DNA of 64,000 bases from Mytilus trossulus (taxonomy: Eukaryota), in the NCBI RefSeq assembly GCF_036588685.1, contig NC_086379.1, positions 33,852,001 to 33,916,000 of the forward strand. Direction: 5' to 3'. Shown piece by piece: positions 1-20,789 of the stretch (its first letter is position 1; every line of letters starts with the position of its first letter). Both the position numbers and the translations under genes were made by a program. The notes beneath the pieces were generated by a model that worked only from the letters and a program-made list of their open reading frames with translations, was not told where the DNA came from and ran no database searches.

Positions 1-72
1 TTTAATACACCATCAATTTTTGGATAGGATTTTGATGACTGTATGTATTGTGAGGAAGAAGGCTACTTGAAT

Positions 73-768
73 GAGGGGGGGACAAGGGGGTCCCCATAAC
101 AGCAAAACAGTGAATTAATTTGGTGGAAAACAGATAACAAGGAATTGAAAAGGGACAATAACAGATAACAGTAAATGAAATATGAAAATAAATGTCCAGA
201 ACAAATCCAGTAGAAGACTCGTAGATCTTAGTATATTATAACTTGTGGTATGGACCTGGAAATTTGTAATTTGTGTAAACAAGACATTTCGGCCGTTGAG
301 GCAGTTCTGTTTTGGTTGATTTTTATAACAGTACAGCATAAATACTGGAATGGTCCTGGTCCAAACGATTTTAAAAGTTTTTTTCTGATGAATGTTACTG
401 AAATTCTTCTGCAAATACAGGGCCACTCGATATTACAAGAAGAAAGACCCCAATAGATATACATTGTAAGAAGATGTGGTAAGCATGCCAATGAGACTGT
501 TATCCATTCAAATCACAATTTTCAATTATCTTCATTTTCTACGGAAGATAGGCTGTCAAAATGCTAACATTTCAATTTCCAATAACAGTTAACAGCAAAT
601 AGATTCTCACAATAACAGATAACAAAATAGATAAAACTCCTATAACAGCTAACAGAGAATAAGACAATAACAGCTAACAGCTAACAGTAAATTTATTTTC
701 AAAATAACGGATAACAAAGAATTAAAATGCCCCATAACAGCATAACAGTTAAACCCCTTGCCCCCCTC
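73..768. mobile_element. Non-autonomous TIR element (MITE) with ATAACAG-rich subterminal repeats; mirrored copy at 3456-4151
   Basis: Ends GAGGGGGGGACAAGGGG / CCCCTTGCCCCCCTC; TTGAAT direct repeat at 67-72 and 769-774 (6-bp TSD). Confidence 0.75.
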
Positions 769-1959
769 TTGAATGCCCTCGATGAAGGTGCTTATATGGA
801 AAATACATCTTTGTTGATTTCGTTGTATTGTTCTGTCTTACTTCGGTACTATAGAATTTGTACACGTGTTCAAATGCCCTTATAAAGATTTGTTCAGAGT
901 TAAATTTAAAATACTGGTAGATAATTTGTTATTTTTGTCTCTGATTCATGAGGGTCTTCAATTGTATATTGTTTAATTTTTTTAGCCCTTTATTCCGCAA
1001 TTTTTGTCAACACATCTCTATTCTGTAGACTGGACCATCGAGACCCTCATTTCTGTTCATTTTTATGTTCACCAAAACAGACTTAGGAAAGTATGTATAG
1101 TAGTTATTGCAGGTAAGGAAATGGGACGATGAAAATAACTTATGTCTGATTCATGTTATGTAATGCATATGGTGTACTTTTATTGGAATATTTATAATGT
1201 TACACGCAGCGGAGTTACGGGCCGGGGGTGTATACTATTTTGTACACTCCTCCTTCATCGCCAATATATATATATATATATATATATAGATGAAGATGTG
1301 ATGTGGTGTGAGTACCAATGAGACAACTCTCCATCCAAATAACAATGTCCGGTGTGTATTTTTTTTGTCCAGTGTTAGTTATTTTTTTTAACCATTTTCG
1401 TTCGTTCTTTGTTGCTATTACAATGTACTTTATAATTTATCTCTTTGTACCAGTCGTTCAAGTTTAAGTAAAAGTTGTGCGTTAAGGATCATTTACACAT
1501 GTAATAAAAATAATTGTATTATGGTGTATGACTATAATAGTTAAAATATTTGAGAAATATGTTTGTTAAAACAGCTATCACGGATTTATAAATATATATC
1601 GTTAGAAGTTACTGCTATTATGAATACTTCACATAGTTTTATAGTAATGTTTGATAAAACTTTTTAAATAATTCTTATTCCCTTTTTGTAACTTATTTTT
1701 AATATTAACTTGACGGGGAAAAGAAACAAAAACACAAAACACATATCACACAGAAAACCTGACCGTACCAGCTTTGTTTCGTATGTTATTTTTTACAAGG
1801 GAGATAAACGTTATAAGTGGGAAAATGGCAGGATCATAACAAAATAAAGGATTTCACACCTGTAAAATTGCTGGAATAGCATGACTTCTGTATGTTGGAC
1901 TCTCTATATCTTTTCTAACTAAATCAACAACTTCCAAGATCTTAATTCTTGGCATTCTG

Positions 1960-2110
1960 GCCACCGTTTCACAAAGGGTCGTAAATCGTGAAAAAGGTCG
2001 TACGACCATTTTAACGATATGCGACCGTTTCACAAATATTTACGATTTACGACCTACGAGGAATATTGGTCGCAAATTCCCGACTGGGTTTAAGCAGTCG
2101 TAAATCGGAA
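1960..2110. promoter_or_regulatory. Left TIR and subterminal repeats of the Harbinger (putative transposase/Myb binding sites)
   Basis: Repeated TCGTAAATCG / CGATTTACGA / CGTTTCACAAA at ~1966, 1979, 2026, 2043, 2098. Confidence 0.6.
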
Positions 2111-2153
2111 ACTTTAATAAAACGGGAAATAATACGTGTCATTTTTAGCAACT

Positions 2154-5100
2154 ATGGCTGCGTTCATGGCTTTGCTAGAACAAGAAGAGAGGAAAGAGAG
2201 GAGGCCGCGTATTTTCCGTGATCGACTATATGACAGATGTTGAGCTGATTGAGCGATACAGAATGCCAAGATTTAAGATCTTGGAAGTTGTTGATTTAGT
2301 TAGAAAAGATATAGAGAGTCCAACATACAGAAGTCATGCTATTCCAGCAATTTTACAGGTGTGAAATCCTTTATTTTGTTATGATCCTGCCATTTTCCCA
2401 CTTATAACGTTTATCTCCCTTGTAAAAAATAACATACGAAACAAAGCTGGTACGGTCAGGTTTTCTGTGTGATATGTGTTTTGTGTTTTTGTTTCTTTTC
2501 CCCGTCAAGTTAATATTAAAAATAAGTTACAAAAAGGGAATAAGAATTATTTAAAAAGTTTTATCAAACATTACTATAAAACTATGTGAAGTATTCATAA
2601 TAGCAGTAACTTCTAACGATATATATTTATAAATCCGTGATAGCTGTTTTAACAAACATATTTCTCAAATATTTTAACTATTATAGTCATACACCATAAT
2701 ACAATTATTTTTATTACATGTGTAAATGATCCTTAACGCACAACTTTTACTTAAACTTGAACGACTGGTACAAAGAGATAAATTATAAAGTACATTGTAA
2801 TAGCAACAAAGAACGAACGAAAATGGTTAAAAAAAATAACTAACACTGGACAAAAAAAATACACACCGGACTTTTATACATTGTTATTTGGATGGAGAGT
2901 TGTCTCATTGGTACTCACACCACATCACATCTTCATCTATATATATATATATATATATATTGGCGATGAAGGAGGAGTGTACAAAATAGTATACACCCCC
3001 GGCCCGTAACTCCGCTGCGTGTAACATTATAAATATTCCAATAAAAGTACACCATATGCATTACATAACATGAATCAGACATAAGTTATTTTCATCGTCC
3101 CATTTCCTTACCTGCAATAACTACTATACATACTTTCCTAAGTCTGTTTTGGTGAACATAAAAATGAACAGAAATGAGGGTCTCGATGGTCCAGTCTACA
3201 GAATAGAGATGTGTTGACAAAAATTGCGGAATAAAGGGCTAAAAAATTTAAACAATATACAATTGAAGACCCTCATGAATCAGAGACAAAAATAACAAAT
3301 TATCTACCAGTATTTTAAATTTAACTCTGAACAAATCTTTATAAGGGCATTTGAACACGTGTACAAATTCTATAGTACCGAAGTAAGACAGAACAATACA
3401 ACGAAATCAACAAAGATGTATTTTCCATATAAGCACCTTCATCGAGGGCATTCAAGAGGGGGGCAAGGGGTTTAACTGTTATGCTGTTATGGGGCATTTT
3501 AATTCTTTGTTATCCGTTATTTTGAAAATAAATTTACTGTTAGCTGTTAGCTGTTATTGTCTTATTCTCTGTTAGCTGTTATAGGAGTTTTATCTATTTT
3601 GTTATCTGTTATTGTGAGAATCTATTTGCTGTTAACTGTTATTGGAAATTGAAATGTTAGCATTTTGACAGCCTATCTTCCGTAGAAAATGAAGATAATT
3701 GAAAATTGTGATTTGAATGGATAACAGTCTCATTGGCATGCTTACCACATCTTCTTACAATGTATATCTATTGGGGTCTTTCTTCTTGTAATATCGAGTG
3801 GCCCTGTATTTGCAGAAGAATTTCAGTAACATTCATCAGAAAAAAACTTTTAAAATCGTTTGGACCAGGACCATTCCAGTATTTATGCTGTACTGTTATA
3901 AAAATCAACCAAAACAGAACTGCCTCAACGGCCGAAATGTCTTGTTTACACAAATTACAAATTTCCAGGTCCATACCACAAGTTATAATATACTAAGATC
4001 TACGAGTCTTCTACTGGATTTGTTCTGGACATTTATTTTCATATTTCATTTACTGTTATCTGTTATTGTCCCTGTTCAATTCCTTGTTATCTGTTTTCCA
4101 CCAAATTAATTCACTGTTTTGCTGTTATGGGGACCCCCTTGTCCCCCCCTCATTCAAGTAGCCTTCTTCCTCACAATACATACAGTCATCAAAATCATAT
4201 CCAAAAATTGATGGTGTATTAAAAGTATTATTCGTCCAGGATTTTTTTTATTAAATTAATAACAGCATGTATGCATGTGTCTATCTCAGAACTTATCCTT
4301 GCATTAACATCTAGTAAGTCATGAAGGAACTGTAATTGCTAACTATGACATCACATGGTCATGCATGTACAATAACATATATTAGTAGCCTTACATCCCA
4401 CAAGTACGTAAAATAATTACCCTACCACGTCCGATATGTGTCTCATTGTTCCTTATTTAAATTAACTTACCACCAGTTGGAATATTAGGCTGAAAGGCGT
4501 GTAAATTATAGTCCAGCGTGTACAAGCTGGTATGTCTAGCTGTCTTTTTTTAATTCTTATCATAAAGAGACGATCATTACTTCATGCTTTACTATATACA
4601 GTTATTCCCCGAAACTTATAGCTCCAAGTTTACGTTGCCAACGTGAGACAATCCTTTAAAGACAAAAGAGTACTCATTACAATCATACCATACACCCAAT
4701 ATAGTTGCCTATTGCTTACATCATAGGCGGATTCATGGGGCTAGGGGTCCATCTTTTTGTGGGAAATGTAGTGGATTATAACAGAAAACAGAAGTGCTTT
4801 ACTATACCAGTGGCGGATCTAGAACTTTTAATACGTGGGGGCCCTCTGACTATTCCAAAAGAGGGGGCGTTCCAGTCATGCTTCAGTGATTCCCTATATA
4901 ATCTGCAATCAAATTTTCCCCGGAAAGGGCCCCCTATATCCACCTATATAGACTAGTAAGGGACTTCTGATTATATATATATACAAAAGTAAAGGGAATT
5001 ACTGAAGCATATTTAAACATGAACCCAATCCCACTTTGGATCCGCCACCGTATACTAATTGACTCAGAGAAGTTGACATAACTACCAATTAAATTAATGA

Positions 5101-8100
5101 GGGTAAAGTCAAATAAACATCAACCGGCATGTACACATAGTTAAATTAATGCTTATAAATCAGACCTGGATGAGAACAATTAACCAATGGTCAGGACACT
5201 GTTGTCATATCAAGATGATTCCCTGGTCGGCCGCTTTAACAACTTACGTACGCCAAAAATACTTAAGCTTCCATATGAGTTTATTACTAGTAATCTGGTA
5301 CAGACTTAACCGTTAAACCTTTTAGGCCAGGTGAGCTAAAAAAGACCAAAACACAAAAACTTAACACTGAGCAATGAACCATGAAAATAAGGTCAAGGTC
5401 AAATAAAACTTGCGTCACTGAAATGTAGATCATAAAATATTTTCATACACCAAATTTGATTGACCTATTACATAAAAGATTACTAAGATCTACGAAAAAT
5501 GGTTAAACATTGACTATAAAGGGGCAATAACTCCTAAAGGGGTCAATTGCACATTTCGGTCATGTTGACTTATTTGTAAATCTTACTTTGCTGAACATTA
5601 TTGCAGTTTACAGTTTATCTCTACTTATAATAATATTCAAGATAATAGCCAAAAACAGTAAAATTTCCTTAAACTTACCAATTCAGGGGCAGCAACCCAA
5701 CAACAGGTTGTCTGATTCATCTGAAAATTTCAGGGCACATAGATCTTGACCTGATAAACAATTTTACCCTCTATCAAAAATGCTCTAAATGCTTTGGTTT
5801 TCGGGTTATAAGCAAAAAACTGCATTTTACCACTCTGTTCTATTTTTAGCCATGGCGGCCTTCTTGGTTGGTTGGTTGTCGGGGTCACCAGACACATTTT
5901 TTAAACTTGATACCTGAATGATGATTGTGGCCAAGTTTGGATTAATTTGGCCCAGTAGTTTTAGAGAAGATTTTTGTAAAAGTTAAAGACGACAGACGCC
6001 AAGTGATGGGAAAAGCTCACTTGGCCCTTTGGGCCAGGTGAGCTAATAATATCATACACAAAATATAGTTGACCTATGACATATAGTATTAGATAAAAAG
6101 ACTCAAAAACTTAACTTTGACCACTCAACCATGAAAATGAGGTCAAGGTCAGATGACATCTGCCGGCTACACATATACACCTTACCATCATTCCATACCT
6201 ATTGCCCAATATTGTGTATTTAGATATTTCTTGCTATTGCACAATACTGTGCAATTGAATATTTCATGCTTTTGCACAATACTGTGCAATTGAAGATTTA
6301 TTACCATTGCCCAATACTGTGCAATTGAAGATTTCTTGCTACTGCCAAATTCTTGTACTAATAATTTTGGTCCAACTTGAATACTGGGCCCAAAATCGAA
6401 AACCTAAGTACATGTTTAGATTCCTCATATCAAAGAACCCCAAGCAATCAATTTTTGTTAAAATCAAGCTTAGTTTAATTTTGGACCATTTGGACCTTAA
6501 TGTAGATCAATTTGAAAACCGGACCAAATAATTAAGAATCTGAATACACAGTTAAATTTGGCATATCAAAGAACCCCAATAATTCATTTTTGGATGAAAT
6601 CATACAAAGTTTAATTTTGGACACTTTTGGCCCCTAATTCGTTGGTATCAAAACTCCCAAAATCAATCCAAAACTTCTTTTTGTGGTCATAAACCTTGTG
6701 TTAAAATTTCATAGATTTCTATAAATTTATACTTAAGTTATTGTGCAAAAAACCAAGACAAATGCTTATTTGGGACCTGTTTTTGGCCCCTAATTCTTAA
6801 ACTGTTGTGACAAAAACTTCCAAAATCAATCTAATACTTAAGTAATTATCTAGAAATCATTCGTCTTCGGATGACGCTGATAACTTCAACGACCTGATAA
6901 CAATATACCACCAATTTTAGCATCCTTATAAAAACTGCAAAATGTACTTCAATTTAGTTATGCATGGACAGCAACCAAACAATATTGTCCGATTTGTCTA
7001 TAAATTAAAAACATGGCCGCCAATAGTCTAGCAACCTTGTCTTGCAGATAGCATTTCTTACTGTCAAAACAAATCTTATTAAAAATTTTGCAACTTGACT
7101 AAACATTATTGAAATGTGGACACAGAGATATGTTTTGCCTGGTAGTTATCTTAGATTCTCGATAGTAAAATGCAAATGTTCAACACAAATGGCAATGATT
7201 GCCTCGCTTGTCCTGTTCAAACTTTAACTTGATGTTTCCCCAGTATTCAACTTTTTCAACCCCTTTTTTTCAGGTATTGGTCTCTTTGAGATATTATGCA
7301 AAGGGGGATTTTTACTCTGAAGTCGGAGATTTGCATGGAATTTCAAAAGCCAGTGTGTCTAGATGCATCACAAGAGTATCTAAAGCCATCGTGTCAGAAA
7401 TGGACAACATAAAATTTCCATCAACAGAAGCTGAGATGAATGTGATTAAAAGGGGATTTTATCGTATTGCCAAGGTCCCAAATGTCATCGGTGCAGTAGA
7501 TGGTACTTTAATCCCCATTATTGCTCCAAAAGAGAATGAACCTGCATATGTCTGTAGGAAAGGATACCATTCCTTGAATATACAGGCAGTTGTGGATCAT
7601 GAGATGAGGTGAGTGAAAACAAAACTGGAAATATGATATGATATTTATTTGGAGATTACTAATTTGCTACTGTATATACTTACCTGTTATTCAGGAAACA
7701 AAAATAAACACAATAAAAATAACAAATAACAGTATTATAATTCACTGATGAAAAAAAGCAACAACATGAAAATAAGCATTGAAATTAAATTCATAAAATA
7801 GGGTAGGAAAGGCAACTTCTTCTTCTTCTTGGTATAAGCCTCCTTTAATTAGGAGCACCTTCAAATATATATGGAGTTTTCCCTTAACTTAAAAAAAAAT
7901 GTTTTTAAAATGATAAAACAAAAATTTTCCAACATATGTACAGCACATATAAATAAACAATTAACTATAGGAATGTCATGCATGGCATATTTACATGGAC
8001 CTTATTATTACAAAATATTCTACCATACAAGTATATTCACTTAAGTATGTGACTTAGTTTTATTTAAATTTAAAATAATGTTTCATTTAAATTTGCTTTT

Positions 8101-9224
8101 TAGTATGCATAAAATGTACATTAAAGGGAGGTTTTATTTAAAAGATCTATGTATTAAAATAATAATAGGTTAAGATGTAAGAATTCAATAAAATCTAAAA
8201 TAGCAGTTTTTCTTAGTGGAATGTTATATGTACTTTATGATCAATGTATAATAAAATCTTTTAAAAAGTTATAAAAACTTGTTTTGCCCCTATCAAAAGA
8301 TTTTAAAAGGTTATATTAATGATAAGCACTGTATAATAAATTGTATAAGGCTGTTGGGGATAGGAGTGATTTTTAAATATTTAAGATTCTTACAATTATT
8401 TAATAATTTAGCTTTATGCATGTACACATTTTATTTTATTTCAGATTTACAAACCTAGTAGCAAAATTTCCAGGCAGTGTACATGACTCGTACATCTTTT
8501 CAAACTCTGAATTGGGATACTTTTTTGAAGAGAACAATGTGGATGGATGGTTACTGGGAGATTCTGGATATGGTCTAAAAAAGTATTTGCTTACTCCAAA
8601 ATTAAATCCTAACACACTGGCTGAGGAGAAATACAATAAGGCTCACTCAAAAACACGCACCATAGTGGAACAGGCATTTGGTGTATGCAAATCTAGATAT
8701 AGGTAAACAAAAATATTATTTTCAAATTTCAAAAAATATCATTTTAAATATATGTTAACGAACAGTCATTCTTATGCCCTCTATAACTTGCTGTTCCATG
8801 TGCACCAAGACTCCTTATTGAAGAAGTTGTATTGTTACCTATAATTCTGCTAAATTCAGTCTTGGGTGCAGAGTATGTCTCATTGACTCTCGTACTACAT
8901 CTTATTAATAAAATATGAAGAATGAAACAATTTTCTTTTTCTTAAGTGCAAATTACAACAATTTCCAATGTAAAAAAAATATTGCTTTTTTTTTATCATT
9001 ACAGGTGTTTGCATAAAACAGGGGGCTGTTTGCCATTTACACCTGACAAATCTGCAATAGTTGTTACAGCTGTTTTTAAACTCCACAATAAGTGTATAGA
9101 TGACAAGTTGCCACTTCCAGATTTTACAGATGATTTTATTGACAATGTAGATAACCATATTAGAGATATTGCACCTGCTACTGTTCAAACTCTTAGAGAA
9201 CACATTATTCAGAGATTTGCCTAA
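2154..9224 (+). CDS. Harbinger (HARBI1-like, DDE_Tnp_4-type) transposase; exons 2154-2358, 7274-7608, 8445-8702, 9005-9224; frameshift at ~2223
   Basis: Spliced translation ...ELIERYRMPR...RSHAIPAILQ|VLVSLRYYAKG...VIGAVDGTLI...RKGYHSLNIQAVVD...FPGSVHDS...LLGDSGY...YNKAHSKTRTIVEQAFG...RYR|CL...LHN. All introns GT-AG and in phase; D-D-E residues present. The ATG2154 frame stops at 2241-2243; ATG2230 gives an open 313-aa spliced ORF. Confidence 0.93.
3456..4151. mobile_element. Mirror copy of the 73-768 MITE, in intron 1 of the Harbinger transposase
   Basis: GAGGGGGGCAAGGGG ... CCCCTTGTCCCCCCCTC flanked by ATTCAA on both sides. Confidence 0.75.
5325..6930 (-). mobile_element. Cluster of Helentron-associated (HINE-like) non-autonomous elements, with ~34-bp tandem repeats at ~6200-6345
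   Basis: Minus strand TTATTAGCTCACCTGGCCCAAAGGGCCAAGTGAGC hairpin start followed by a GTC microsatellite (~6048-5985). A second GGCCAGGTGAGCTAA end lies at ~5326; TTGCACAATACTGTGCAATTGAA repeats follow. Boundaries approximate. Confidence 0.5.
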
Positions 9225-10099
9225 AAATTTATTTATATGCCTATATGATTCATGAAAATTAGAAAAACATGTTTCTGTTTTCCACCAAAAATATATTTAT
9301 ATCAATTTTCAATTTATATAACAGAAATCTCAATTTTTACTATTATGTATAATTGCATGTACTCAGTAATTCACAATTAAGAAATATGAATGAGAATATG
9401 GCTGTAGGGTATTATATAAAATTATCTTTAAAGGGGCACTAGCTACTAGATATATAAAAAATCTGAAGTATGTTTTTTTTTGTTCAATCATTAATGAAAG
9501 TGAAATAGTGAAATAATAATTTGCTTTTATCAGCTGGAATGGTTCAGTTTTTTCAAATAAAGCTAATAATCATTGAATTATTCATTTGCCAGTGAAAAAC
9601 TCAACCTATTTAAATCCGTATTTATGTGAACTCCAAATTAACCCTGTAGAAAGATATAGAATATGCATGCGCTGCCTGTGTATTGTTATTTAAAGGAAAA
9701 GAATGTCAACCTTGAAAATGAAACAAAGGTAAATAATTTGATTGATTAATTCAATCCACAAAAACTCTTTCTGATAACAGTAAAAACCATGATAAACATA
9801 AATTTATAATTTATAAAACAAAATTTACCAGACCTATAAAGTTCTAATTGCAAGGGCAGTTTATTCTATTTATATTTAACAGACCTATAAAATTTGAATT
9901 GCATGGGTAGTTTAATCTATTTATATCTATGTTTATGTATACATCGCTTATATGGTCATAGAAGGTCAACTCAATAGTTAATTAGATGGTGTCTTGGCTA
10001 AAATTCTGGTATCTGTGGAAAAACTGCTTTAATTTACTAAAGTTTAAATTTAAGTTTTGTTATTTGAAAAAAATTTTTTTTAGCTTTCATATTTTTGGT

Positions 10100-13000
10100 T
10101 TAATTTTCATTTATCATTTTAATAATTGGAGACAACATCACATCAGATAAGTCGTTTGAAAATTTCATTTTCTTCAACTTTACATAATCTTCAAATAGCT
10201 CCAGGCCCCTTTTCTTCATTGCAATGCCTTGTTTTAACAGTTCTAGTTTTTCTTCCCTTTGTCTTCTATAAACCTCTTGGTTTTCCTGTTTTAGGGCAAA
10301 TTTCTTTTTTTCCAATTCCAGTTTTTCTTTTTTAACTTTCAGCTTTTCTTTTTCAACTTCTAATAACAATTCTGTAAAGAAACATTGTTTAAATACTTAC
10401 ATAACAAAAGGACACGTCCAACACTATTTATATATAGGTATCTCTTACATTAAAATTGTACAAGAACTTGGTGGAAATAAATTCATCATGTAGATCTTTT
10501 TGCTCTTTACACTAGTGATAAATGAATTAACTTAAAGTGATACTGGTTAATTTTCTGTATGATTACTAAAATATAGTCTTTAAATTAGTTCAATTGATAT
10601 CTTGAGTTGGCCATGGTTTTAGTATAAATTGGTATTATATTGATAATTGTCAATTTGCTTAGTTTCCTCTTCTACTTTCTTTTAATATCACACTCGGATT
10701 TCCTTTGAACTGATTTGGAGTGAGTTCAAAGCTGTAATATTTTATTTAATGCAGACTCAAGATACAGAGAGTAGTTTAAATATCACTAAAAAAAAATATA
10801 ACTGAAAAGTATCTATGCACCCATTTCAAGTCCGGAAAACATGGACTTAATTTTGCCTTTTATGTTTACAAATTTTATTTCATATGGATGTTTTAGATTC
10901 AGTGTGGCATCCATTTCTTGTATTACTATGCACAACATTTCACAATAATTTAATTTAACTTTTCTTCTGATTGGCTGAGCCTTTTTTGTTTATCAGCTCA
11001 TAGACATAACTTTATCATGTGGTTATGATGGTTATCATTGTTTTTTCATGATTTACTTGAGTTTAAATTGGAGTTAAGAATTAAATTATAAGAAATGAAT
11101 GTATAAATACTTTTTTGGTCTATCCTGAATAACATAAAAAATGTGGCACACACTTTAAAATAAATTGCTTGCAGGTTATACTGTGTCCACCTCATATTAC
11201 AGTAATTCCTTGATTATTGTTCTAATTTACAAACCTGATGAAGACGGAACAGGATAATTTTTGGTTTCTTTCCTGACTGGAGATAGTATTAATCTCTTTT
11301 CAGTGTCATTTTTTTCTGTAAATTATATTATAATTAGGTACAATTAACATTATGAGTAGGCATAATACACAAAATATTATTCATCATTAACACTTGAAAA
11401 AACAAATATCAAATAATTATCTTAAAACATGCTTATCATGATTAAAAAGTGTGGAAAACTGATTATCTGCATAAATTGACATGTTCAAATATATTTATGC
11501 GCTGTACCTGAATTAAATTCTGCGTAATAAAAGTTAAAATTAGAAGAAATAATAAATATTGTTTAGATTAAGCTTTAGCTTTGTTGACATGGGACTTATC
11601 AAAAGTAACATACCTCTTGTTGGCAATGCTGCAGACAAGTTAGCCTCAGCTGTTTCAGGATTTTCTGAAACAAAATTATATCATAATTTTAAAAAACTTA
11701 ATGAAAATATAAAATGTTATGATTTTATTCCAATTATTACATTTTTAACCAGATTTTTGTTACAAAATGTCAGTTATTGATTTGGGGATGTACTGTGGTC
11801 GGGCGGCCGGGCAGGCGGCAATCAAATGTTGTCAGTGCATTAACTCATGAACCGTTCAACCAAAACTTTTAAAATTTTAATATGTTGTTACTAACAACTA
11901 AATGAAGGTCAAGTTCAATAATGGTGATTTTGGTCTCTTTGAAAGTAACACTAAAGTGTGATGGTCCATTTGTAATGTTTAAGTTTATTTAATTTTTTAA
12001 GCTAACATGCAATGGTTTGTTAATAGAACCTGGTGATGAAGGTGTTGGCATTTTAGCCTTGGCATTAATTAAGATGTTTTTATTCAGCCTCACCATACCC
12101 CCCCCCCAAAAAAAAAATGAAATAAAATATTTTTTGGTTTAACTGTGGTTCAGTTCAGTGTAGAGATATACATACATTTTTAAGACATGTTAAAAGCACC
12201 ATATAAGCAGAATGATATATTTGTTCTTCAATAATTGCACTTACTTAGGACACTTGGTTCACCTTCCTCATGAAACTGTATGAAGTTCTTTGGCTTTGCT
12301 GAAATGTTAAGTTTCAAAGTAGAATACTATAGCGACAAGAACACTATTCATACTATTACAACTGTAAATAAACTGATTTGGAGTAATAAAAAAAATATTC
12401 TACAATACAAGTTAATTCAATACAGAAGGTCAATATCCTTAGGGACAACATTTATAAATCAACGAATGAAAAAAAAATTAATTGGTCAGAGTACACAGTT
12501 ATCGTTCTTTGATTTTCTTTGTCCACGTATATAGTCCTTAGTGTGGACAGTGAATTACTGGCTAAATTTTGTTATACCCCTCCCAAATTTATTTCTCCCT
12601 GTTTTATGCCTCATTTAGCAATTCGGGGGGGGGGGGGGGGGGGGGGGGGGTGAAATGACACTGTAAAAAATTTGGGTTATAAATATTAATGTAAAGTAGT
12701 GATTATGTCCAGCTGAAAAAGGTACAAAAAATAGCACTTCGGAAGCTGTCAAAAGCTTTCAAGACCCCCGTAACTTAAAATTTCCATATTTCGAGTTAAA
12801 AATGAAGTTTTCTCTAATTTTGATATAATTTGTCCCAAAAGTAGTACAACACACTTTAAAAATATTATTGAGAAATCACAGGGGGGATTTTTTTTTCATT
12901 TTCATTTATTGTCTAAAAGTAGTTCACTCAAAATAACTGTGTAGTCTGTACTCGGATCAATTCAAATAGTCTGCAAGTTTTTCGTTTCATTGACATCTTT

Positions 13001-16000
13001 TTTAAATGTATGTTTATTGGTGAATCCATGTATCCTAAATTAAGGTAAGGAAATCATTTTGGACCATTACCATTAGTACCAATCAGAATCTTTACTCATA
13101 ATGTAGCTCTAGCTTTTTATTTCGGTATCCACCAGAATCCACCTTTTGCACAAATGTTGGTCTTTTTCCAACAATTGTGACTTAAACAACAACTAGATGG
13201 GTCAAAGCGACATAAATGGCCCCCGTCTCAAAATGTTGAAAAATCATCAATTTCAATAACACATGTGGTTGATGTGGACACAAACATGATGGTAGTCTCA
13301 CATGTCGAAAATCAGCTCAAAATCTAGTGGTGTATAGAAAATAGTCTGTACAAGAGTGATTTTCAACAATTTTCAAAGTTGATATCCCTTAATTTTGTCA
13401 AAAATTAGCTGAGAAAACCAAAGTCCAAAGCCCAAAATAACAGCAGAAATAGTCAAGTGAAACAAAATTTAACTTGATCTGTAAGTTATCATGGGTAACT
13501 CACATACCAAAAATTTGCCCAATATCTAAAAGCGTTTTGAAAAAGAGTCTGTATAACTGTGCTTTTCAACAATTTATCAAAGTCAAAACCATGTAATTTC
13601 GGTAAAAATTAGCGAAGCAGAACTAAAATTAAACTTGATCTGTAACTCATTATGGTTAACTCACATACCAAAATTTAGCCCATTGTCAGCAGGCGTTTAA
13701 AATTTCTGAATTACAGAATTTCTGTCAAGGATAAAACTATATGGCAGAGCCATAAAATTTGACTGATACGCCGGATAGGTGAAACAATTTACCTTGTTGC
13801 ATGAAATATAATAATATTCTTAAAACAAGAATAATTGTATAGTTAGTAAATAATCTTCCTACCTAGAGAATCATAGCCTGATTCCAACCCTGAAATGGCA
13901 GCGTCTGATGTTACACTTATAATCTGAAAAGAAATAAGAAATATACTGTATAATTGTGTTTTTTTCCTGTAAAAGTACTGTGTGAAACATTCATTGGGTT
14001 TCAGAACCAGAGGTTAGTGGCTTAGCTTGACTATTTTTAAGTGTACACCCCAACCTTTGCGAGAGGTTCGATATCCCTGATCGACCCAGGTTATAACACT
14101 TTCTAGTAGTGGATTTGAGGGGGAGGTGTCATTAACAACTGATCAATAGCAAATCAAAATACCCAATAGGCTATTTTTTCATCTTTTATGTTTAATGCAT
14201 TCATGGTGTTGATTTGAAATCTAATGGTCAAATTTCAAATGGTCAATCATTTCAATGGTGTAACAGAAAATATCCAAACCAGTTACTTTAAAACATTTTT
14301 TCAAATGGAACCGTGGGGTATAGCAATTACTCGAGTAAACCCTCTTTTTGTGCAAATGTAGTTAATGAATATGAATTTATTAACTGTCATAGATGTTATG
14401 GTGCATTATGTTAATTCGTAAAGGGTTCCATGGAACCGTAGTTCTTGCTATATTACCTCTTCCCAAGAAAAGTGAATCTTTTTATCAGTCCATCACAGGA
14501 TTTTAAATAATCAAACAGTTTCTTTATAATTTATTTTCCTTTATTTGGAATATTTTACTACTACCTAAGTCTCATGACAATATCTGAAGGTTTTAAAAAT
14601 TATCATGTAGACAATAATAATAGGGTACCATTTGATTGAAATCAAATATTGTGCCTTTTATTTGCAATTACAAGCTATTGAAGAGAGATTTAATGGCTGG
14701 TGTGCTTTAAACCAGATTTTATTAATTCATTGAGATTGAAATAATTTTTTTACCAAAATTCAAGTGTAGGCCTATGCGTTTTGATGTAAACGTAGCTACG
14801 CGCCTGGAGGTGCATACATGTAAGCTTATTTGTGTAGCCCTAACACATCATACATATTCCTGTCCTTAGTCAAAAAAAAGTCTTTAAAATTTGTGTTGTA
14901 TATTATTCCACAATTTATCCATATGATACAGTAAAGGTTTAATGGCTTAAGGAATTTGCACCATAAAAAATATGAAAGTCTTAAAAACTAAGGAAAAATT
15001 GATTAATCACCTTTAATTCGTTAGAGTCAATCTCTGGAGGGGCTGGCCCACCTCCAGTCATCAAACTGTCTCTCCTCCTTTTGTTCTCCTTCTTTCTGGC
15101 ATCACTTTGCAAATCAAGCCATTTTTTCTTTACTTGCGTGATACTTCTAGGTTGTATGTTGCAGGAATTGATACTGAAAAAAAATGTGTAATGTTTAAAA
15201 ACATACATGTAATTCTTATTTTTATTGATTATCGTTGATCATCTCCAGAAGATTGATTATGTCTCTTTAGCCAATACAGCAAAAGCAAAAAAAAGCAATC
15301 AAGAAGAGATGACCATTTGAAAGTCTGTTATCATGTTAATCGCTATTTGACAATAAAAAATTGTCAATTAAAGGCCACATGCCCCTAAGTTTCTAATGAT
15401 AATTTTTCTTACCTCTTTACCCCGATGAGAAAGGGATTTATTAATCAACAAGATCAAAGGAAAATAAAAGCAATAATAAAGAGATAACTGTATTGTATTT
15501 GAAGCTTTAAGGACGTCCATCGGTAGTTTTACTGTCAGTTTGCCTGGCGACGCGATATAAGTGTTGTGTGGTCACAAGTTGAATATTTTTCAATATTTGA
15601 ATTCTTTGATTAGTTTTTCTTTTTATTACATTGGCAAATGGCTTTTTTTAAAGAAATTTGTGTAAAAAATGTTAGAAACTATATCTTTTTTTCTATGCAT
15701 TTACTATTTGTTTTGTTCTGCCGTTATCAACGTCTTGACAATGCCTATCGTTGTATGATGTCAGAGAGTGAAATACTGTAAATTCAGAAATTATTGCGAG
15801 GTTTTTATTATTGCGAATAATGCGTCTGAGTTGTAAACGCAATAATTAAAACTCGCATTTTGTAATATTTTAACTGAATTAAGCAGGACTTTTCTCAAAA
15901 TCGTAAAAATTAAAATCGCATTCAAGTGTAAATTGACAGAATCGCAATAATAAATGCACGCAATAATTTCTGAATTTACAGTAACCATGTTTATTTCACA

Positions 16001-19000
16001 TGTGAAATTATCGGATTTTATCTTATGTAAATAATTGCAACCTATGTAATAAAAAGATATAAATTAGCAAGATGAACTTCAACCTGCTAACAATGGCTTT
16101 AGAATTATTTTTTTTTCTTATTTTGGAGTATGAAATTCAGAAACAATAAATAATTTCTTCCTATCAAATTCTTACTAATTTTATAAAATTTATATTATCA
16201 TGATTATTAAGTGTTCTAAAACTGATGATCTAGATATAATAATGATATTGACTGTTTTTACAGTAAATGTACTCCAACTGTTTTCACTTTGAGTTGTAAA
16301 TATTCTTATAAATCATTCTTGATATTTAGGAACATGTTTATATATCTAATTGTATGGATGATTGTACTGCCTTATTTATATCAACATGATGTCAGCAATA
16401 AAACTTTGTCAGTTTTTATCCTGTATGTTTTATGTTATTTATTTTTAAAGTTGGCTGTATAGTCATGATAGTAGATGTGAATGTGCTAGATAAAATTCAT
16501 GTTAGTCTTATTAAATTAAAGTAATTATTATTATATAATGTTCAAAATAAAATAAAATAAAATTGAAACCTGAGAAATAAACCAGTACAATGTACAAGTG
16601 AATACATTGTATGTTACAACAGTGGCTAGTAAAGAATTTCCCTTTGGAAATGTTATGTTTTACACATAATAATGATAATTATATCGGTTGGACAAGTTAA
16701 ACATATATACTTTTTCTTATCATTTCAAAAGTAATCTTTAAAATGAAAATATTGAAGAGGTTGGGAACAAACCCTCTATATGGTGGTAATACATGGAATA
16801 GAAGGATAATCTATTTTTGTTTAATCTGGATTTAAATCAAAATAGGCCAGGGCAGACTGTCACTGGCATTCTCTACTTATTATGGCAGTGACCTGAAACA
16901 GTTGATGCACCAATTGATGTTCTTAATTTAATATGTACATGCCCAGTTTGATGCTTACCCGACTAAATATAAAATCTATTGTTTACCATGATTGAAAGCA
17001 ATGATGATCAGGTTTATTCTACTCACTTATGCCTCACTGAACAGAATTTCTATTGATAGATTTTACATGAAATTTAAAGGTCAACTATTCAATTTGTTGT
17101 TGATCAGGTGTTCAGATAGGGCATGTCAGTTAACTGCTATAGTAGTCTGTTGTAATATATATAATCAAGTGTCATTTTGTTTATTTTCTTTTGTTACATC
17201 TTCTGACATCAGATTCGGACTTCTCTTGAACATGTTGAATTGAATTTTAAATGTACATATTGTTATGCGTTACTTTTCTTCATTGGCTACAGGTGGCACG
17301 GTAGTATTTCCTGGCCCATAGGGGATAATGATAGCCTTTTTAGAATTTTCACCACTTTCTAACACTGCAAAAAATTCTACATTCACAGTTTACTGAAGTA
17401 CTTTCATTTTACTATTCAGAAATGAATTTGAATATGTATCATGACCGTTTACTTTTTTTGCTATTTTTAAAAACCTAAGGCCACTAGTACTTTTAGGTCT
17501 TTTATGGTGCAGTGAATACAAAATTTAAAAAAAATCTCAAAAATTCATTTTCATCTGTATGTAAAATTATTTCATATTTTTCTACACCTGATTCATCCCT
17601 CAGTTTGGGAAAGTATGTTCAGTTGATACTGTACTTTTTGTCCAATCACACTGTTTAGATACATTTACCTAAGTAGGGTACACAAAAGAGCAACCTAAAT
17701 TCTGGAAAGCAAATACTACCGTGCCACCTTAACCAAGACATAACAAACTTGCAACCAGTCATGACACCTATGATGCATAGACTTCTTATTTTGGAACATA
17801 TTACAATAAAGAATACTAGTCTGCACTCATTTCTTACCCAAAAAAAATGAAACATTACATCCCTACCCCATCTGGCAGATTTTCACTTTTTTTTTCATCT
17901 TACCATTTTTACTTAAGGAGTGAACAAAACCCAAATATATGATGTTTCAAATCAACACAGAAGTCAAACATGGTGATTCAGGAGGAATTAGTGGATTGCC
18001 AACTCTGTTTATGGTTAATCTGACTGAAAGAAACAGTTTTAGCACCAAATCATAAAAACTGGTATTAAAGTCCATTCCACATTTTACAGCATGCCTTATA
18101 TTACTTTAAACATTTCCAGATTATGAGGATAATACAACAAGAGTCTTTAGATTGCAGTTAACTATTATTCCAAAATCTGTTTGGCAATACATGTACTAGA
18201 ACACATCTCTTAGTTGACTGTTTGTCTATTTCTCATGTATGCATTAAGTTAAATTATGTCCCCTTACATAATCAATTTGCCTTTATTGTGCTTTTCACTG
18301 TCAGAAAATCTTAAAAGTTAATGGTATTTGCATGGAAAATGAATAAACCATTTAATCTTGCTGATATAACATCATAAAAACATTCTTTGTCAAAAATAAT
18401 GTCTTGTCAATGTAAAGACACCCCTATTTCTATCACTATTTCAGACCAATATGAGAGCTAAATCAATAAGTAAGGACCCCTTAACCACTTACTGGTTCCC
18501 CAAAAGCTGCTACTGGTGTCATGTTACATCAGAACTACAAATTAAACCTGAATAAAACTAGTATAGCTGTACTTCTGTTGAAAAAAATAAGAAATTATGC
18601 AATTTATTCATTTCGGTGAAAATAATAGGACCTACATGCAACCTAAGAATGTCGCGTCTCAAATTTCAGTGGTTGCACATGTGTTAGACACTGCGAAAAG
18701 TTAAAGCGAGCATTTATAATTGAAAGTGTATTGCATGTTACATAAAAATAATGAATTTCAACTTTCTAGGTAAATATCTACATTATCACCCACAGGTCAG
18801 GCAAAATTTGCTGAATCAGCAATTTTTACTCTCAGGGGTGGAATTTAAGGCTTGTTTTTATCATAGTTGCCCTTAATCAACTTTTTATTGATAAACTTAC
18901 AAATTGCATAGGTAAAAAAGAATCCTTTAATGATTTAGTGTAAAAATATATATCCCCCTTAAGGTGGCACGGTAGTATTTCCTGGCCCATAGGGGATAAT

Positions 19001-19601
19001 GATAGCCTTTTTAGAATTTTCACCACTTTCTAACACTGCAAAAAATTCTACATTCACAGTTTACTGAAGTACTTTCATTTTACTATTCAGAAATGAATTT
19101 GAATATGTATCATGACCGTTTACTTTTTTTGCTATTTTTAAAAACCTAAGGCCACTAGTACTTTTAGGTCTTTTATGGTGCAGTGAATACAAAATTTAAA
19201 AAAAATCTCAAAAATTCATTTTCATCTGTATGTAAAATTATTTCATATTTTTCTACACCTGATTCATCCCTCAGTTTGGGAAAGTATGTTCAGTTGATAC
19301 TGTACTTTTTGTCCAATCACACTGTTTAGATACATTTACCTAAGTAGGGTACACAAAAGAGCAACCTAAATTCTGGAAAGCAAATACTACCGTGCCACCT
19401 ACAGATATAGGGGAGGGTTGAGTTGAAGATTGTTTACCTTTCTGTAATGGAGTCCCAACATTTAGTTTTGTCGGAACTGGATAGGCCAGGAGAAAATTTC
19501 CCCTTAATTATGTCTATACTCCCGGTAACAAGAGTTACAAGGGTTGAAACCTCTTCTTTTGACCACCGGATGGCCTTCCCTGTGCTAACAATAGAGTCCA
19601 T
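10100..19601 (-). CDS. Harbinger Myb/SANT-like DNA-binding protein, ~281 aa; exons 19601-19438, 15173-15011, 13923-13863, 12298-12245, 11664-11614, 11315-11235, 10371-10100
   Basis: MDSIVSTGKAIRWSKEEVSTLV...KTKCWDSITES|INSCNIQPRSITQVKKKWLDLQSDARKK...MTGGGPAPP...|IISVTSDAAISGLESGYDS: trihelix Trp pattern plus TGGG motif, then a C-terminal Lys/Glu coiled coil. GT-AG junctions are in phase, total 846 nt. Small middle exons are less certain. Confidence 0.87.
15774..15983. mobile_element. TA-flanked MITE (TACTGTAAATTCAGAAATTATTGCG family)
   Basis: 25-bp inverted ends TACTGTAAATTCAGAAATTATTGCG / CGCAATAATTTCTGAATTTACAGTA; second copy at 27632-27813. Confidence 0.85.
17292..19399. mobile_element. 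Composite-like KolobokP-type non-autonomous DNA transposon: LTDR1 17292-17728, internal region, LTDR2 18963-19399
   Basis: Two apparently identical 437-bp direct repeats, each bounded by an 18-bp TIR GGTGGCACGGTAGTATTT/AAATACTACCGTGCCACC. TTAA at both inner junctions (17729-32, 18959-62); TACA TSD at 17288-91 and 19400-03. Confidence 0.88.
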
Positions 19602-19894
19602 CTTCAAGTTATGATGTCGTCTGCTTGGGAACCTTTCATGAAGCACATTTCGCGGATTTTGTTTTTAACTATAAATGTTTATATTACAATTCGATACTCA
19701 ACATACTTACCTGAAACCGTTCCATTCTTATATAACCTGCTTGTCTTACTTGAAAGAACTGTATACATAAACCAGAAATATATCATATGACATATGATTG
19801 TCGATAAAGAGCTCCGATAAATGATATTATTAATTCAACACAGGTGCGCGTCTGATCAATTTACCGACCTTCACACAAAAGAGCTGTATAAACC

Positions 19895-20024
19895 GTGGTC
19901 GGTAATCGGAAGTCGTACGATAATTTTTCCGACACGTTTGTGAAACACTCGTTAACTTGGTCGGGAACATATTCTACGACCAGTCGTAAATCGTACGATT
20001 TACGATGTTTTGTGAAACGATGGC
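19895..20024. promoter_or_regulatory. Right subterminal repeats and TIR of the Harbinger
   Basis: GTCGTACGA, TTTGTGAAAC and GTCGTAAATCGTACGATTTACGA motifs leading into the TIR. Confidence 0.6.
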
Positions 20025-20789
20025 CTGGGGAATATTGTCCCGAGTAAATTTTTATATTGCACGAGCTTGCGAGTGTAATTTATGTTCTACGATGGACAAT
20101 ATTCCCGAATATTTATGCATAACCCTTTTATTGTATAGCAATATAATATTTGGAAGTAAATCTTGGTTTAAACTAAGATTTTGTCGTTGATGACGTCATG
20201 AATCTTAAAGATGTATTGCACTAGGGTAATATTGGAATTTATTGCACGCTAGCTTTTGGCTACTTTCTATGTTAAAGGTTATATTGCTTTGCAACAAGAT
20301 TTATTAATTCATGTATTTCTTTTGTAGACGAAACGCACGTCTGGCGTGAATACTTTTATGTTAAAAGAAACTCTTGCAACAAATTTTTCTTATGGTACGA
20401 ACGTAACTGCCGATATATTGAATCAATGTTGAATACATTTGTATCATAGCTTTCTCTACCTGTTTAACCATGTATATTTGCTCTGTGGTTTTTGTCTGAA
20501 GGCTTTATTATTACAGTATTTAAAAAACAGTGACAGAAGATGTTACATAATAACTTTCAAAAGAATGACCAAACTAGACAGGAAGGAAGTTAATCAACAC
20601 TGCTATGACGTATCACTCTTACCGCAACAATATTGGGAGGAAATACAAGTAATATATGTACATTTACGATCATTCTTGTATTTAAAAGGGTTGGAACTCT
20701 AGTATACCTAGAGCGTCACAAATTATACATTTATTATCATCTGTATAAATGTGTTACAATCAATAATTTGGTACTCGAGTAATAGTTTC

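What the first reader, a model, noticed from the sequence alone, without database searches (positions are those of the whole stretch)
1..4223. Harbinger end inserted into its own transposase exon, creating a giant palindrome
Seen: the left palindrome arm stops exactly at the first base of the left TIR (1960). The flanking CTG (1957-59) is the mirror of the CAG at 2259-61 inside transposase exon 1, so the sequence left of the element is an inverted copy of its own interior joined at a CWG target triplet. The right flank (CTGGGGAATATT) is not the missing remainder (expected CTGTATCGCTC), so this is not a simple nested insertion and the matching CTGs are not a true TSD. Inference: alternative (sister-chromatid or self-targeted) transposition, as known for maize Ac/Ds, generated an inverted duplication. 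The small arm differences argue against a plain assembly fold-back.
Basis: partly seen in the sequence, partly recalled or inferred. Interest (0 to 1): 0.88.

Follow-up and report, generated by a model that had tools for sequence, protein, structure and literature searches.

The report
Harbinger transposon inserted into itself
A large cut-and-paste (Harbinger) transposon in an animal genome pasted its own ends into its own transposase gene. This left a 34-kb near-palindrome whose junctions match, base for base, the known "sister-chromatid / hybrid-element" kind of aberrant transposition; I found no report of that kind for this transposon superfamily.

Summary
The arms are about 15.6 kb (left) and 17.8 kb (right), not 2 kb. 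The left arm runs 13.6 kb upstream of the window.

- **The element.** The Harbinger spans 1960-20024. It has DDE_Tnp_4 exons on the + strand and Myb/SANT exons on the - strand.
- **The missing piece.** It is followed by CAG and then by an inverted right TIR.
- **Full structure.** A-CTG-[L-e1]-CAG-[R'-e2'-CTG]-[L-e1-e2-R]-CTG-B, 33,986 bp with no gaps.
- **Empty site.** Flanks A and B are two halves of one copy of a ~310-bp repeat, joined by a single CTG. So the outer CTGs are a true target duplication.
- **Inner target.** The CAG at 2259-61 is duplicated in inverted orientation.
- **Simulation.** A simulated hybrid-element (sister-chromatid) insertion from a 15.9-kb progenitor reproduces both junctions exactly.
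- **Rival.** An inverted nested self-insertion followed by a flip of the 299-bp centre gives the same sequence and cannot be excluded.
- **Independent arm histories.** The arms differ by 25 substitutions, with derived states on both. A 2.1-kb TE with its own target duplication sits in one arm only. The central exon 1 alone has a 14-bp frameshift deletion.

The kind of event is known from Ac/Ds and P elements; this is a new member of it in PIF/Harbinger.

The parts
1..1959 (-). Proximal 1,959 bp of the left (inverted) arm. The arm continues upstream to C7:33838355 (inverted right TIR). It is preceded by CAG (C7:33838352-54), by a second L-TIR plus exon-1 5' part (C7:33838039-33838351), and by the outer CTG (C7:33838036-38).
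1957..1959 (+). CTG: inverted copy of the duplicated CAG target, abutting the left TIR (junction J2 at 1959/1960).
1960..2258 (+). 299-bp centre (spacer) of the palindrome: left TIR (1960-1975), a subterminal repeat of the TIR motif at 2021, the 5' UTR, and the start of transposase exon 1 (ATG at 2154). It carries a derived 14-bp frameshift deletion at about 2221-2224.
2259..2261 (+). CAG target triplet inside transposase exon 1.
2259..20027 (+). Right arm (17,769 bp): the rest of the element up to the right TIR, plus CTG.
7199..7609 (+). Open frame holding transposase exon 2 (start of DDE_Tnp_4).
8407..8703 (+). Open frame holding transposase exon 3 (DDE_Tnp_4 core, E = 1e-16).
8946..9221 (+). 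Open frame holding the last transposase exon (inferred acceptor near 9004). The left-arm copy has Cys>Arg at 9006.
   Evidence: the exon limits are inferred
10103..19664 (-). Myb/SANT-like partner gene, multi-exon. Open frames at 19437-19664, 14984-15238 and 10103-10396.
17287..19398 (+). 2.1-kb TIR element with its own target duplication, present only in the right arm. The left arm keeps the exact empty site.
20009..20024 (-). Right TIR (15 of 16 bases match the left TIR).
20025..20027 (+). CTG: right copy of the original 3-bp target duplication. Its partner is at C7:33838036-38.
20028..20310 (+). Flank B: the 3' part of a ~310-bp high-copy repeat. The first ~25 bp of that repeat are the last bases of flank A, which reconstructs the empty site.

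Best explanation
A roughly 15.9-kb autonomous Harbinger had inserted at a CTG inside a short repeat. After the locus was replicated, the transposase paired the left end of the copy on one chromatid with the right end of the copy on the sister chromatid (or the homologue). This is hybrid-element insertion, also called sister-chromatid transposition. The transposase cut both ends and integrated them, with the usual 3-bp stagger, into the CAG at codons 40-41 of the transposase exon 1 of the copy that still held its left end. The e2-R fragment was thereby inverted. The result is A-CTG-[L-e1]-CAG-[R'-e2'-CTG]-[L-e1-e2-R]-CTG-B. The other chromatid would have been left with an empty site. Shown: the structure, both junctions at exact TIR termini, the inverted 3-bp target duplication, the retained outer TSD, the empty site, and the independent later mutations of the copies. 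Inferred: that the two ends came from different chromatids in a single step, and that the transposase did the joining.
For: The arms and their extent are. A second L-TIR plus e1, then CAG, then an inverted R-TIR lie upstream, with the outer CTG. The L and R termini and the CWG target are defined by other copies: 8 of 12 L-end flanks are CAG or CTG, and one 9.6-kb copy has a perfect CAG/CAG TSD. The element has PIF/Harbinger gene content. A simulated hybrid-element insertion from a 15,918-bp progenitor is collinear with the observed 36 kb at 99.7% and gives both junctions to the base. The last 26 nt of flank A match the 5' end of a repeat family at 22 of 26 positions, and flank B continues that repeat at 91-93%, with one CTG between them. 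There are no Ns in the 104 kb examined. The arms diverged independently: 25 substitutions, of which 16 could be polarised (7 derived on the right arm, 9 on the left). A TE insertion with its own TSD sits in one arm only. A 14-bp deletion is found only in the central exon 1. The mechanism is documented for Ac/Ds (bioRxiv 10.1101/2020.01.07.897926) and defined for P-type elements (PMC2775673).
Against: The same final sequence arises from a normal insertion of a whole excised copy in inverted orientation, followed by recombination between the arms that flips the 299-bp centre. Nothing in the sequence separates the two routes. No reads, other individuals or RNA could be examined. The event is old (0.16% arm divergence), so it cannot be observed directly. 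Pairing of ends in trans has not been shown for any PIF/Harbinger transposase.
Confidence: 0.52

Rival explanations
1. Double-Ds-like origin. A complete copy, excised from the sister chromatid or the homologue, inserted normally in inverted orientation into the CAG of the resident copy's exon 1. Later, homologous recombination between the two ~16-kb inverted arms flipped the 299-bp centre.
For: This gives exactly the same junction sequences and target duplications as the observed structure; J2 and its reverse complement are the same duplex (reasoned). Long inverted repeats with a short spacer are expected to flip. Ordinary transposition is normally more frequent than hybrid-end events.
Against: It needs two events. 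In the assembled orientation there is no complete inverted inner element: its L-e1 lies in the host orientation.
Confidence: 0.38
2. Assembly artefact: a fold-back chimera, or two haplotypes of a simple insertion joined head to head.
For: No read-level check was possible. Palindromes are a known failure mode of long-read assembly. The 0.16% divergence and the TE presence/absence between the arms could be allelic differences.
Against: An artefact would have to invent two complementary junctions, each at an exact TIR terminus, with a 3-bp target duplication in inverted orientation. It would also have to place the missing L-e1 piece precisely where transposition predicts, inside a gap-free contig and bracketed by a validated empty site. 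A fold-back would be symmetrical and would leave no L-e1 at the far end.
Confidence: 0.04
3. Inverted duplication independent of transposase: fold-back priming or template switching at a break near the left TIR.
For: The CTG at the junction could be read as 3-nt microhomology between the original TSD and the CAG at 2259-61.
Against: Fold-back priming predicts an open-ended inverted copy with a second junction at an arbitrary place. Instead the left arm ends exactly at the right TIR terminus and is joined via CAG to an e1 that ends exactly at the target. Arm identity does not extend past 1959/2259.
Confidence: 0.03

Closest known systems
Sister-chromatid transposition (alternative transposition) of maize Ac/fAc, which yields inverted duplications and composite insertions (Zhang & Peterson 1999, from my own knowledge; bioRxiv 10.1101/2020.01.07.897926)
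   Same: Ends from two different chromatids are used as one transposon. The new junctions lie at exact element termini. There is a target duplication and an inverted duplication of transposon sequence.
   Different: That system is hAT (8-bp TSD), involves two separate elements (Ac plus fractured Ac), targets sites 0.3-3 Mb away, and was seen de novo with the reciprocal deletion recovered. Here the superfamily is PIF/Harbinger (3-bp CWG), a single element is involved, the target is inside the element itself 299 bp from its left end, the host is an animal, and the event is inferred from one assembly.
Hybrid element insertion of Drosophila P elements (Gray, Tanaka & Sved 1996, from my own knowledge; definition in PMC2775673)
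   Same: The left end of one sister copy and the right end of the other, at the same site, act together and insert nearby. This is the closest formal model for a single-element event.
   Different: It belongs to the P superfamily (8-bp TSD) and was studied through male recombination. I could not read the original paper here, so its cases of self-insertion are cited from memory only.
Double Ds, the chromosome-breaking Ds of maize: one Ds inserted in inverted orientation into an identical Ds (from my own knowledge; no open paper was found)
   Same: A transposon inserted into a copy of itself in inverted orientation, which leaves extra ends in unusual relative orientation.
   Different: In double Ds the inner element is complete and fully inverted. 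Here the 299-bp L-e1 piece is in the host orientation, so the structure matches double Ds only after a flip. It is also 34 kb rather than 4 kb.
Aberrant transposition of linked mPing elements in rice (PMC7584900)
   Same: The same superfamily (PIF/Harbinger), with rearrangement breakpoints at element termini.
   Different: Those events use ends of two linked MITEs on one chromosome and give deletions or megatransposons. Inversions and inverted duplications could not be seen with that study's short reads.
Mu killer and the 'Ac killer' loci: inverted duplications of a TIR plus part of the transposase gene that silence the family
   Same: An inverted duplication that includes transposase exons and lies next to an intact promoter-bearing 5' end.
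   Different: No transcript or small-RNA evidence exists here. The arms are far longer and include the whole partner gene.

Membership tests
PIF/Harbinger superfamily | DDE_Tnp_4 (PF13359) transposase | tested here: met
   8407-8703 scores E = 1.2e-16 (61 bits) and 7199-7609 scores 24.8 bits, equal to the cut-off. Exons were searched one by one. The joined spliced model was not built or searched.
PIF/Harbinger superfamily | A second, Myb/SANT-like DNA-binding gene | tested here: met
   PF13873 on the - strand at 19437-19664 (E = 4e-8), plus a weak match at 14984-15238.
PIF/Harbinger superfamily | Short TIRs and a 3-bp target duplication | tested here: met
   The TIRs match at 15 of 16 bases. 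The locus has CTG/CTG and a 9.6-kb copy on C5 has CAG/CAG. The empty site was reconstructed from paralogous repeat copies.
Hybrid-element / sister-chromatid transposition product | Both novel junctions lie at exact transposon termini, one left end and one right end | tested here: met
   J1 is e1-CAG|R-TIR' and J2 is e2'-CTG|L-TIR. The termini are defined by 11 other L ends and 6 other R ends.
Hybrid-element / sister-chromatid transposition product | The target triplet is duplicated, and the copies are in inverted orientation around the inverted segment | tested here: met
   CAG at C7:33838352-54 and CTG at 1957-59. The simulation reproduces this.
Hybrid-element / sister-chromatid transposition product | The original TSD is kept at the outer ends, with no flanking deletion or duplication | tested here: met
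Hybrid-element / sister-chromatid transposition product | The two ends came from different DNA molecules; a reciprocal empty-site chromatid exists | not testable with these tools
   This is a historical event, and the alternative route (nested insertion plus flip) gives the same sequence.
Double-Ds-type nested self-insertion | A complete inner element, bounded by both TIRs, inverted inside the host copy | tested here: not met
   After the inverted e2' comes L-e1 in the host orientation, not e1'-L'. The feature would be met only if a flip of the centre is assumed.
Mu-killer-like silencer | The inverted repeat is transcribed into hairpin RNA and yields small RNAs against the family | not tested
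   RNA runs could not be reached.
Assembly fold-back | A symmetrical palindrome with no element-specific junction logic, lacking spanning reads or showing halved depth | tested here: inconclusive
   The structure argues strongly against it, but reads were not available.

The most novel reading that the evidence does not exclude
The 34-kb palindrome acts as a natural 'killer' locus. Transcription could start from the intact transposase promoter in the outer L-e1, or from the Myb-like gene, which lies on the + strand in the left arm. It would then run through antisense and then sense transposase exons, form a long hairpin, and seed piRNA/siRNA silencing of this low-copy Harbinger family. [quoted passage not shown] If the scan's other unverified notes of double or stacked Harbingers in this genome hold (s1-820535, s1-827173), self-insertion would be a recurrent route to such loci.
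Probability: 0.15. Interest if true: 0.75.

Novelty: new member of a known kind. Interest (0 to 1): 0.55.

Why it matters
Alternative transposition is a proven source of duplications, inversions and transposon-silencing loci, but base-level natural examples come almost entirely from hAT (Ac/Ds) and P elements. This locus shows the complete set of signatures for a PIF/Harbinger element in an animal genome. That implies either that the Harbinger transposase can synapse ends held on different DNA molecules, or at least that it targets its own sister copy. It also shows that one such event can create a 34-kb palindrome that persists long enough to diverge by 0.16% and to take a new TE insertion. 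Finally, it offers concrete junctions for population genotyping and for testing whether such palindromes seed small-RNA silencing in animals.

Tried and rejected
**Readings rejected**
- Simple nested insertion. With the upstream sequence, the true discrepancy is only the orientation of the 299-bp centre.
- Fold-back priming with CTG microhomology. It cannot produce J1 or the distal L-e1.
- Two haplotypes misjoined. Neither junction exists in any simple allele.

**Searches that found nothing**
- An alternative haplotig or an empty site in the same assembly. Flank A is unique and no second copy of the arms exists.
- Another inverted pair of this family in the genome. The transposase region occurs only here (twice), on C2, twice on C29 and twice on C1, with no other inverted pair.
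- Papers combining 'alternative transposition' with Harbinger, or on double Ds. Nothing bore directly on the finding. Gray et al. 1996 is not held.

Exons were searched one by one.
Full report
**1. What is in the sequence**

The window is G000:C7:33852001-33916000, in the interior of an 85-Mb contig. Inside the window, 1-1959 is the reverse complement of 2259-4223, and 299 bp (1960-2258) lie between the two. The palindrome is cut off by the window edge.

I added 40 kb of upstream sequence. With it, the right arm runs from 2259 to 20027. The left arm runs from 1959 back to window position -13648, which is C7:33838352. A global alignment gives arms of 17,769 and 15,608 bp. They differ by 25 substitutions and 10 indel events, one of which is a 2,112-bp insertion in the right arm. 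There is no N in the 104 kb examined.

**2. The element**

Base 1960 starts the left TIR (GCCACCGTTTCACAAA). The same motif, with one mismatch and inverted, ends at 20024 and is followed by CTGGGGAATATT.

The genome holds 13 left ends and about 8 right ends of this family. In all of them similarity starts at the same base, and the flanks are unrelated. The three bases outside the left end are CAG or CTG in 8 of 12 independent cases. A 9.6-kb copy on C5 has a perfect CAG/CAG duplication. So the target is CWG and the duplication is 3 bp.

Gene content:
- On the + strand, open frames at 7199-7609 and 8407-8703 match DDE_Tnp_4.
- On the - strand, open frames at 19437-19664 and 14984-15238 match Myb_DNA-bind_5.
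- The inferred exon 1 starts with the ATG at 2154 and ends at a GT donor at 2359. The CAG at 2259-61 lies inside it.

Exons were searched one by one. I did not build or search a joined spliced model.

Other copies show that large size is a family trait, not debris particular to this locus. The C29 copy, about 18.8 kb from its left end to its right end, is similar in pieces out to at least 14.3 kb of the element. The C2 copy is 96-97% identical over 8.8 kb.

**3.

A second left TIR starts at window -13961 (C7:33838039). It is preceded by CTG and followed by the same 5' UTR and exon-1 start (L-e1). That copy stops exactly after the CAG target. The next base is the first base of an inverted right TIR, at C7:33838355.

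The full structure is A-CTG-[L-e1]-CAG-[R'-e2'-CTG]-[L-e1-e2-R]-CTG-B. It measures 33,986 bp from the outer left TIR to the right TIR.

**4. Empty site**

Flank B begins with a high-copy repeat of about 310 bp. Aligning three other copies of that repeat shows that it starts about 25 bp further left than flank B does. Those 25 bp are the last bases of flank A: 22 of 26 positions match, and flank B continues the repeat at 91-93%.

A and B therefore join into one repeat copy with a single CTG. This shows three things:
- The whole 34 kb sits in one former insertion site.
- The outer CTGs are a real target duplication.
- The outer left TIR and the right TIR at 20024 belong to one original insertion.

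**5. Mechanism**

Take a single element, A-CTG-L-e1-e2-R-CTG-B, after replication. Suppose the transposase pairs the left end of chromatid 2 with the right end of chromatid 1 and cuts both. The two flanks can then rejoin as an empty site, leaving A-L-e1-e2-R] and [L-e1-e2-R-B. Integration of these two ends into the CAG of the first piece has two possible orientations:
- In one, the result is a direct repeat of L-e1 plus a lost circle.
- In the other, the result is A-L-e1-CAG-R'-e2'-CTG-L-e1-e2-R-B.

I built the second product in silico from a 15,918-bp progenitor. It is collinear with the observed 36 kb at 99.7%, broken only by the later 2.1-kb insertion. Both junctions are reproduced to the base. 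The CAG is present on both sides of the inverted fragment although the cut copy had only one, which is the mark of a staggered transposase integration.

This is hybrid-element insertion (P elements; defined in PMC2775673), also called sister-chromatid transposition (Ac/Ds), with the element itself as the target.

**6. The rival that cannot be removed**

Suppose instead that a complete excised copy had inserted, inverted, at the same CAG, as in double Ds. The product would be ...e2'-CTG-[e1'-L']-CAG-e2.... That differs from the observed sequence only in the orientation of the 299-bp centre. The centre lies between 16-kb inverted repeats, so one crossover between the arms flips it. J2 and its reverse complement are the same duplex, so the local junctions are identical in both isomers.

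The one-step route fits the assembled orientation directly. The two-step route needs a flip, which may be frequent. I put them at 0.52 and 0.38. Either way, the element's ends were pasted by transposase into a copy of its own exon 1. I hold that general statement at about 0.9.

**7. Real or artefact**

The internal evidence is nevertheless strong:
- Both junctions lie at exact TIR termini, with an inverted 3-bp duplication.
- The missing piece is where the model puts it.
- The empty site is validated.
- The contig is gap-free.

The copies also have separate histories:
- Of the 16 substitutions that could be polarised with the C2 and C29 copies, 7 are derived on the right arm and 9 on the left.
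- A 2.1-kb TIR element with at least 7 copies at 94-100% in the genome sits in the right arm with its own target duplication, while the left arm keeps the intact empty site.
- Only the central exon 1 has lost 14 bp between two ATCG repeats. The outer copy and the two other copies in which this stretch could be read keep them.

The substitution divergence of 0.16% is far below the 3-4% that separates this copy from its nearest relative. I put an artefact at 0.04.

**8. State of the genes (described only)**

- The outer exon 1 is intact for 40 codons and then runs into the inverted right TIR.
- The central exon 1 is frameshifted by the 14-bp deletion.
- Exons 2 and 3 are identical in both arms. 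The left-arm copy of the last exon has a Cys>Arg change at the position mirrored by 9006.
- The open frames of the Myb-like gene are the same in both arms apart from two residues near their edges.

By the canonical gene model, the locus therefore encodes no intact transposase.

**9. Comparison and novelty**

The kind of event is known: Ac/Ds sister-chromatid transposition and its inverted-duplication 'killer' loci, P-element hybrid-element insertion, and double Ds (from my own knowledge). In PIF/Harbinger, aberrant transposition has been inferred for pairs of linked mPing elements, giving deletions and megatransposons. That study's short reads could not detect inversions (PMC7584900).

I found no report of a hybrid-end or self-insertion product for this superfamily. 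The library search is incomplete, so this is weak evidence of absence. I class the finding as a new member of a known kind.

The host was not identified here. The genome is 1.3 Gb, and C1-C14 are the large, chromosome-sized contigs among those seen in the search results.

**10. Notes from the scan**

Other first-stage notes on this window called the 18-kb element unusually large (s1-821118), called the 2.1-kb insertion a KolobokP element (s1-821023), and proposed a Mu-killer-like role for the centre (s1-820734). Another note reports a 26-kb 'double Harbinger' elsewhere in this genome (s1-820535). I could not locate or test that one. It is not of this family by the criterion.

Noticed in passing
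window 17287-19398: A 2.1-kb element with TIRs (G)GTGGCACGGTAGTATTT and a 4-6-bp target duplication (C)TACA(G). At least 7 copies at 94-100% identity occur in the genome, the closest other copy being 99% identical, so the family is young. A first-stage note calls it KolobokP.
   Followed up: partly
window 20026-20310 and C7:33838013-38: A high-copy repeat of about 310 bp with ~100-bp internal inverted repeats. More than 80 matches at about 88% were found, which is a lower bound. It is the host site of the Harbinger, and the insertion lies ~25 bp inside it.
   Followed up: partly
window 338-770 and 3455-3886: A ~430-bp dispersed repeat inside the inferred intron 1 of the transposase gene, with dozens of genomic copies at about 90%. 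It is present in both arms and therefore predates the rearrangement.
   Followed up: no
window 6199-6373: A tandem array of a 35-bp unit (about 5 units) inside the element, followed by a 2-copy 103-bp direct repeat at 6394-6632.
   Followed up: no
G000:C29:185622-200784 and C29:677294-688692: Two copies of the same family on contig C29 share an identical right-end flank and similar identities. This suggests a segmental duplication of about 490 kb spacing rather than two separate insertions.
   Followed up: no
window 12625 (right arm) against the left arm: A run of 14 extra G in the right arm relative to the left arm. It may be a real homopolymer length change or a sequencing artefact of a poly-G tract.
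   Followed up: no
window 1857-2009, - strand: A 51-codon ATG open frame crosses J2. It starts in the reverse complement of the left TIR and runs in frame into the left-arm remainder of exon 1 (from the internal Met). A 5'-truncated transposase transcript from the left arm is therefore conceivable.
   Followed up: no
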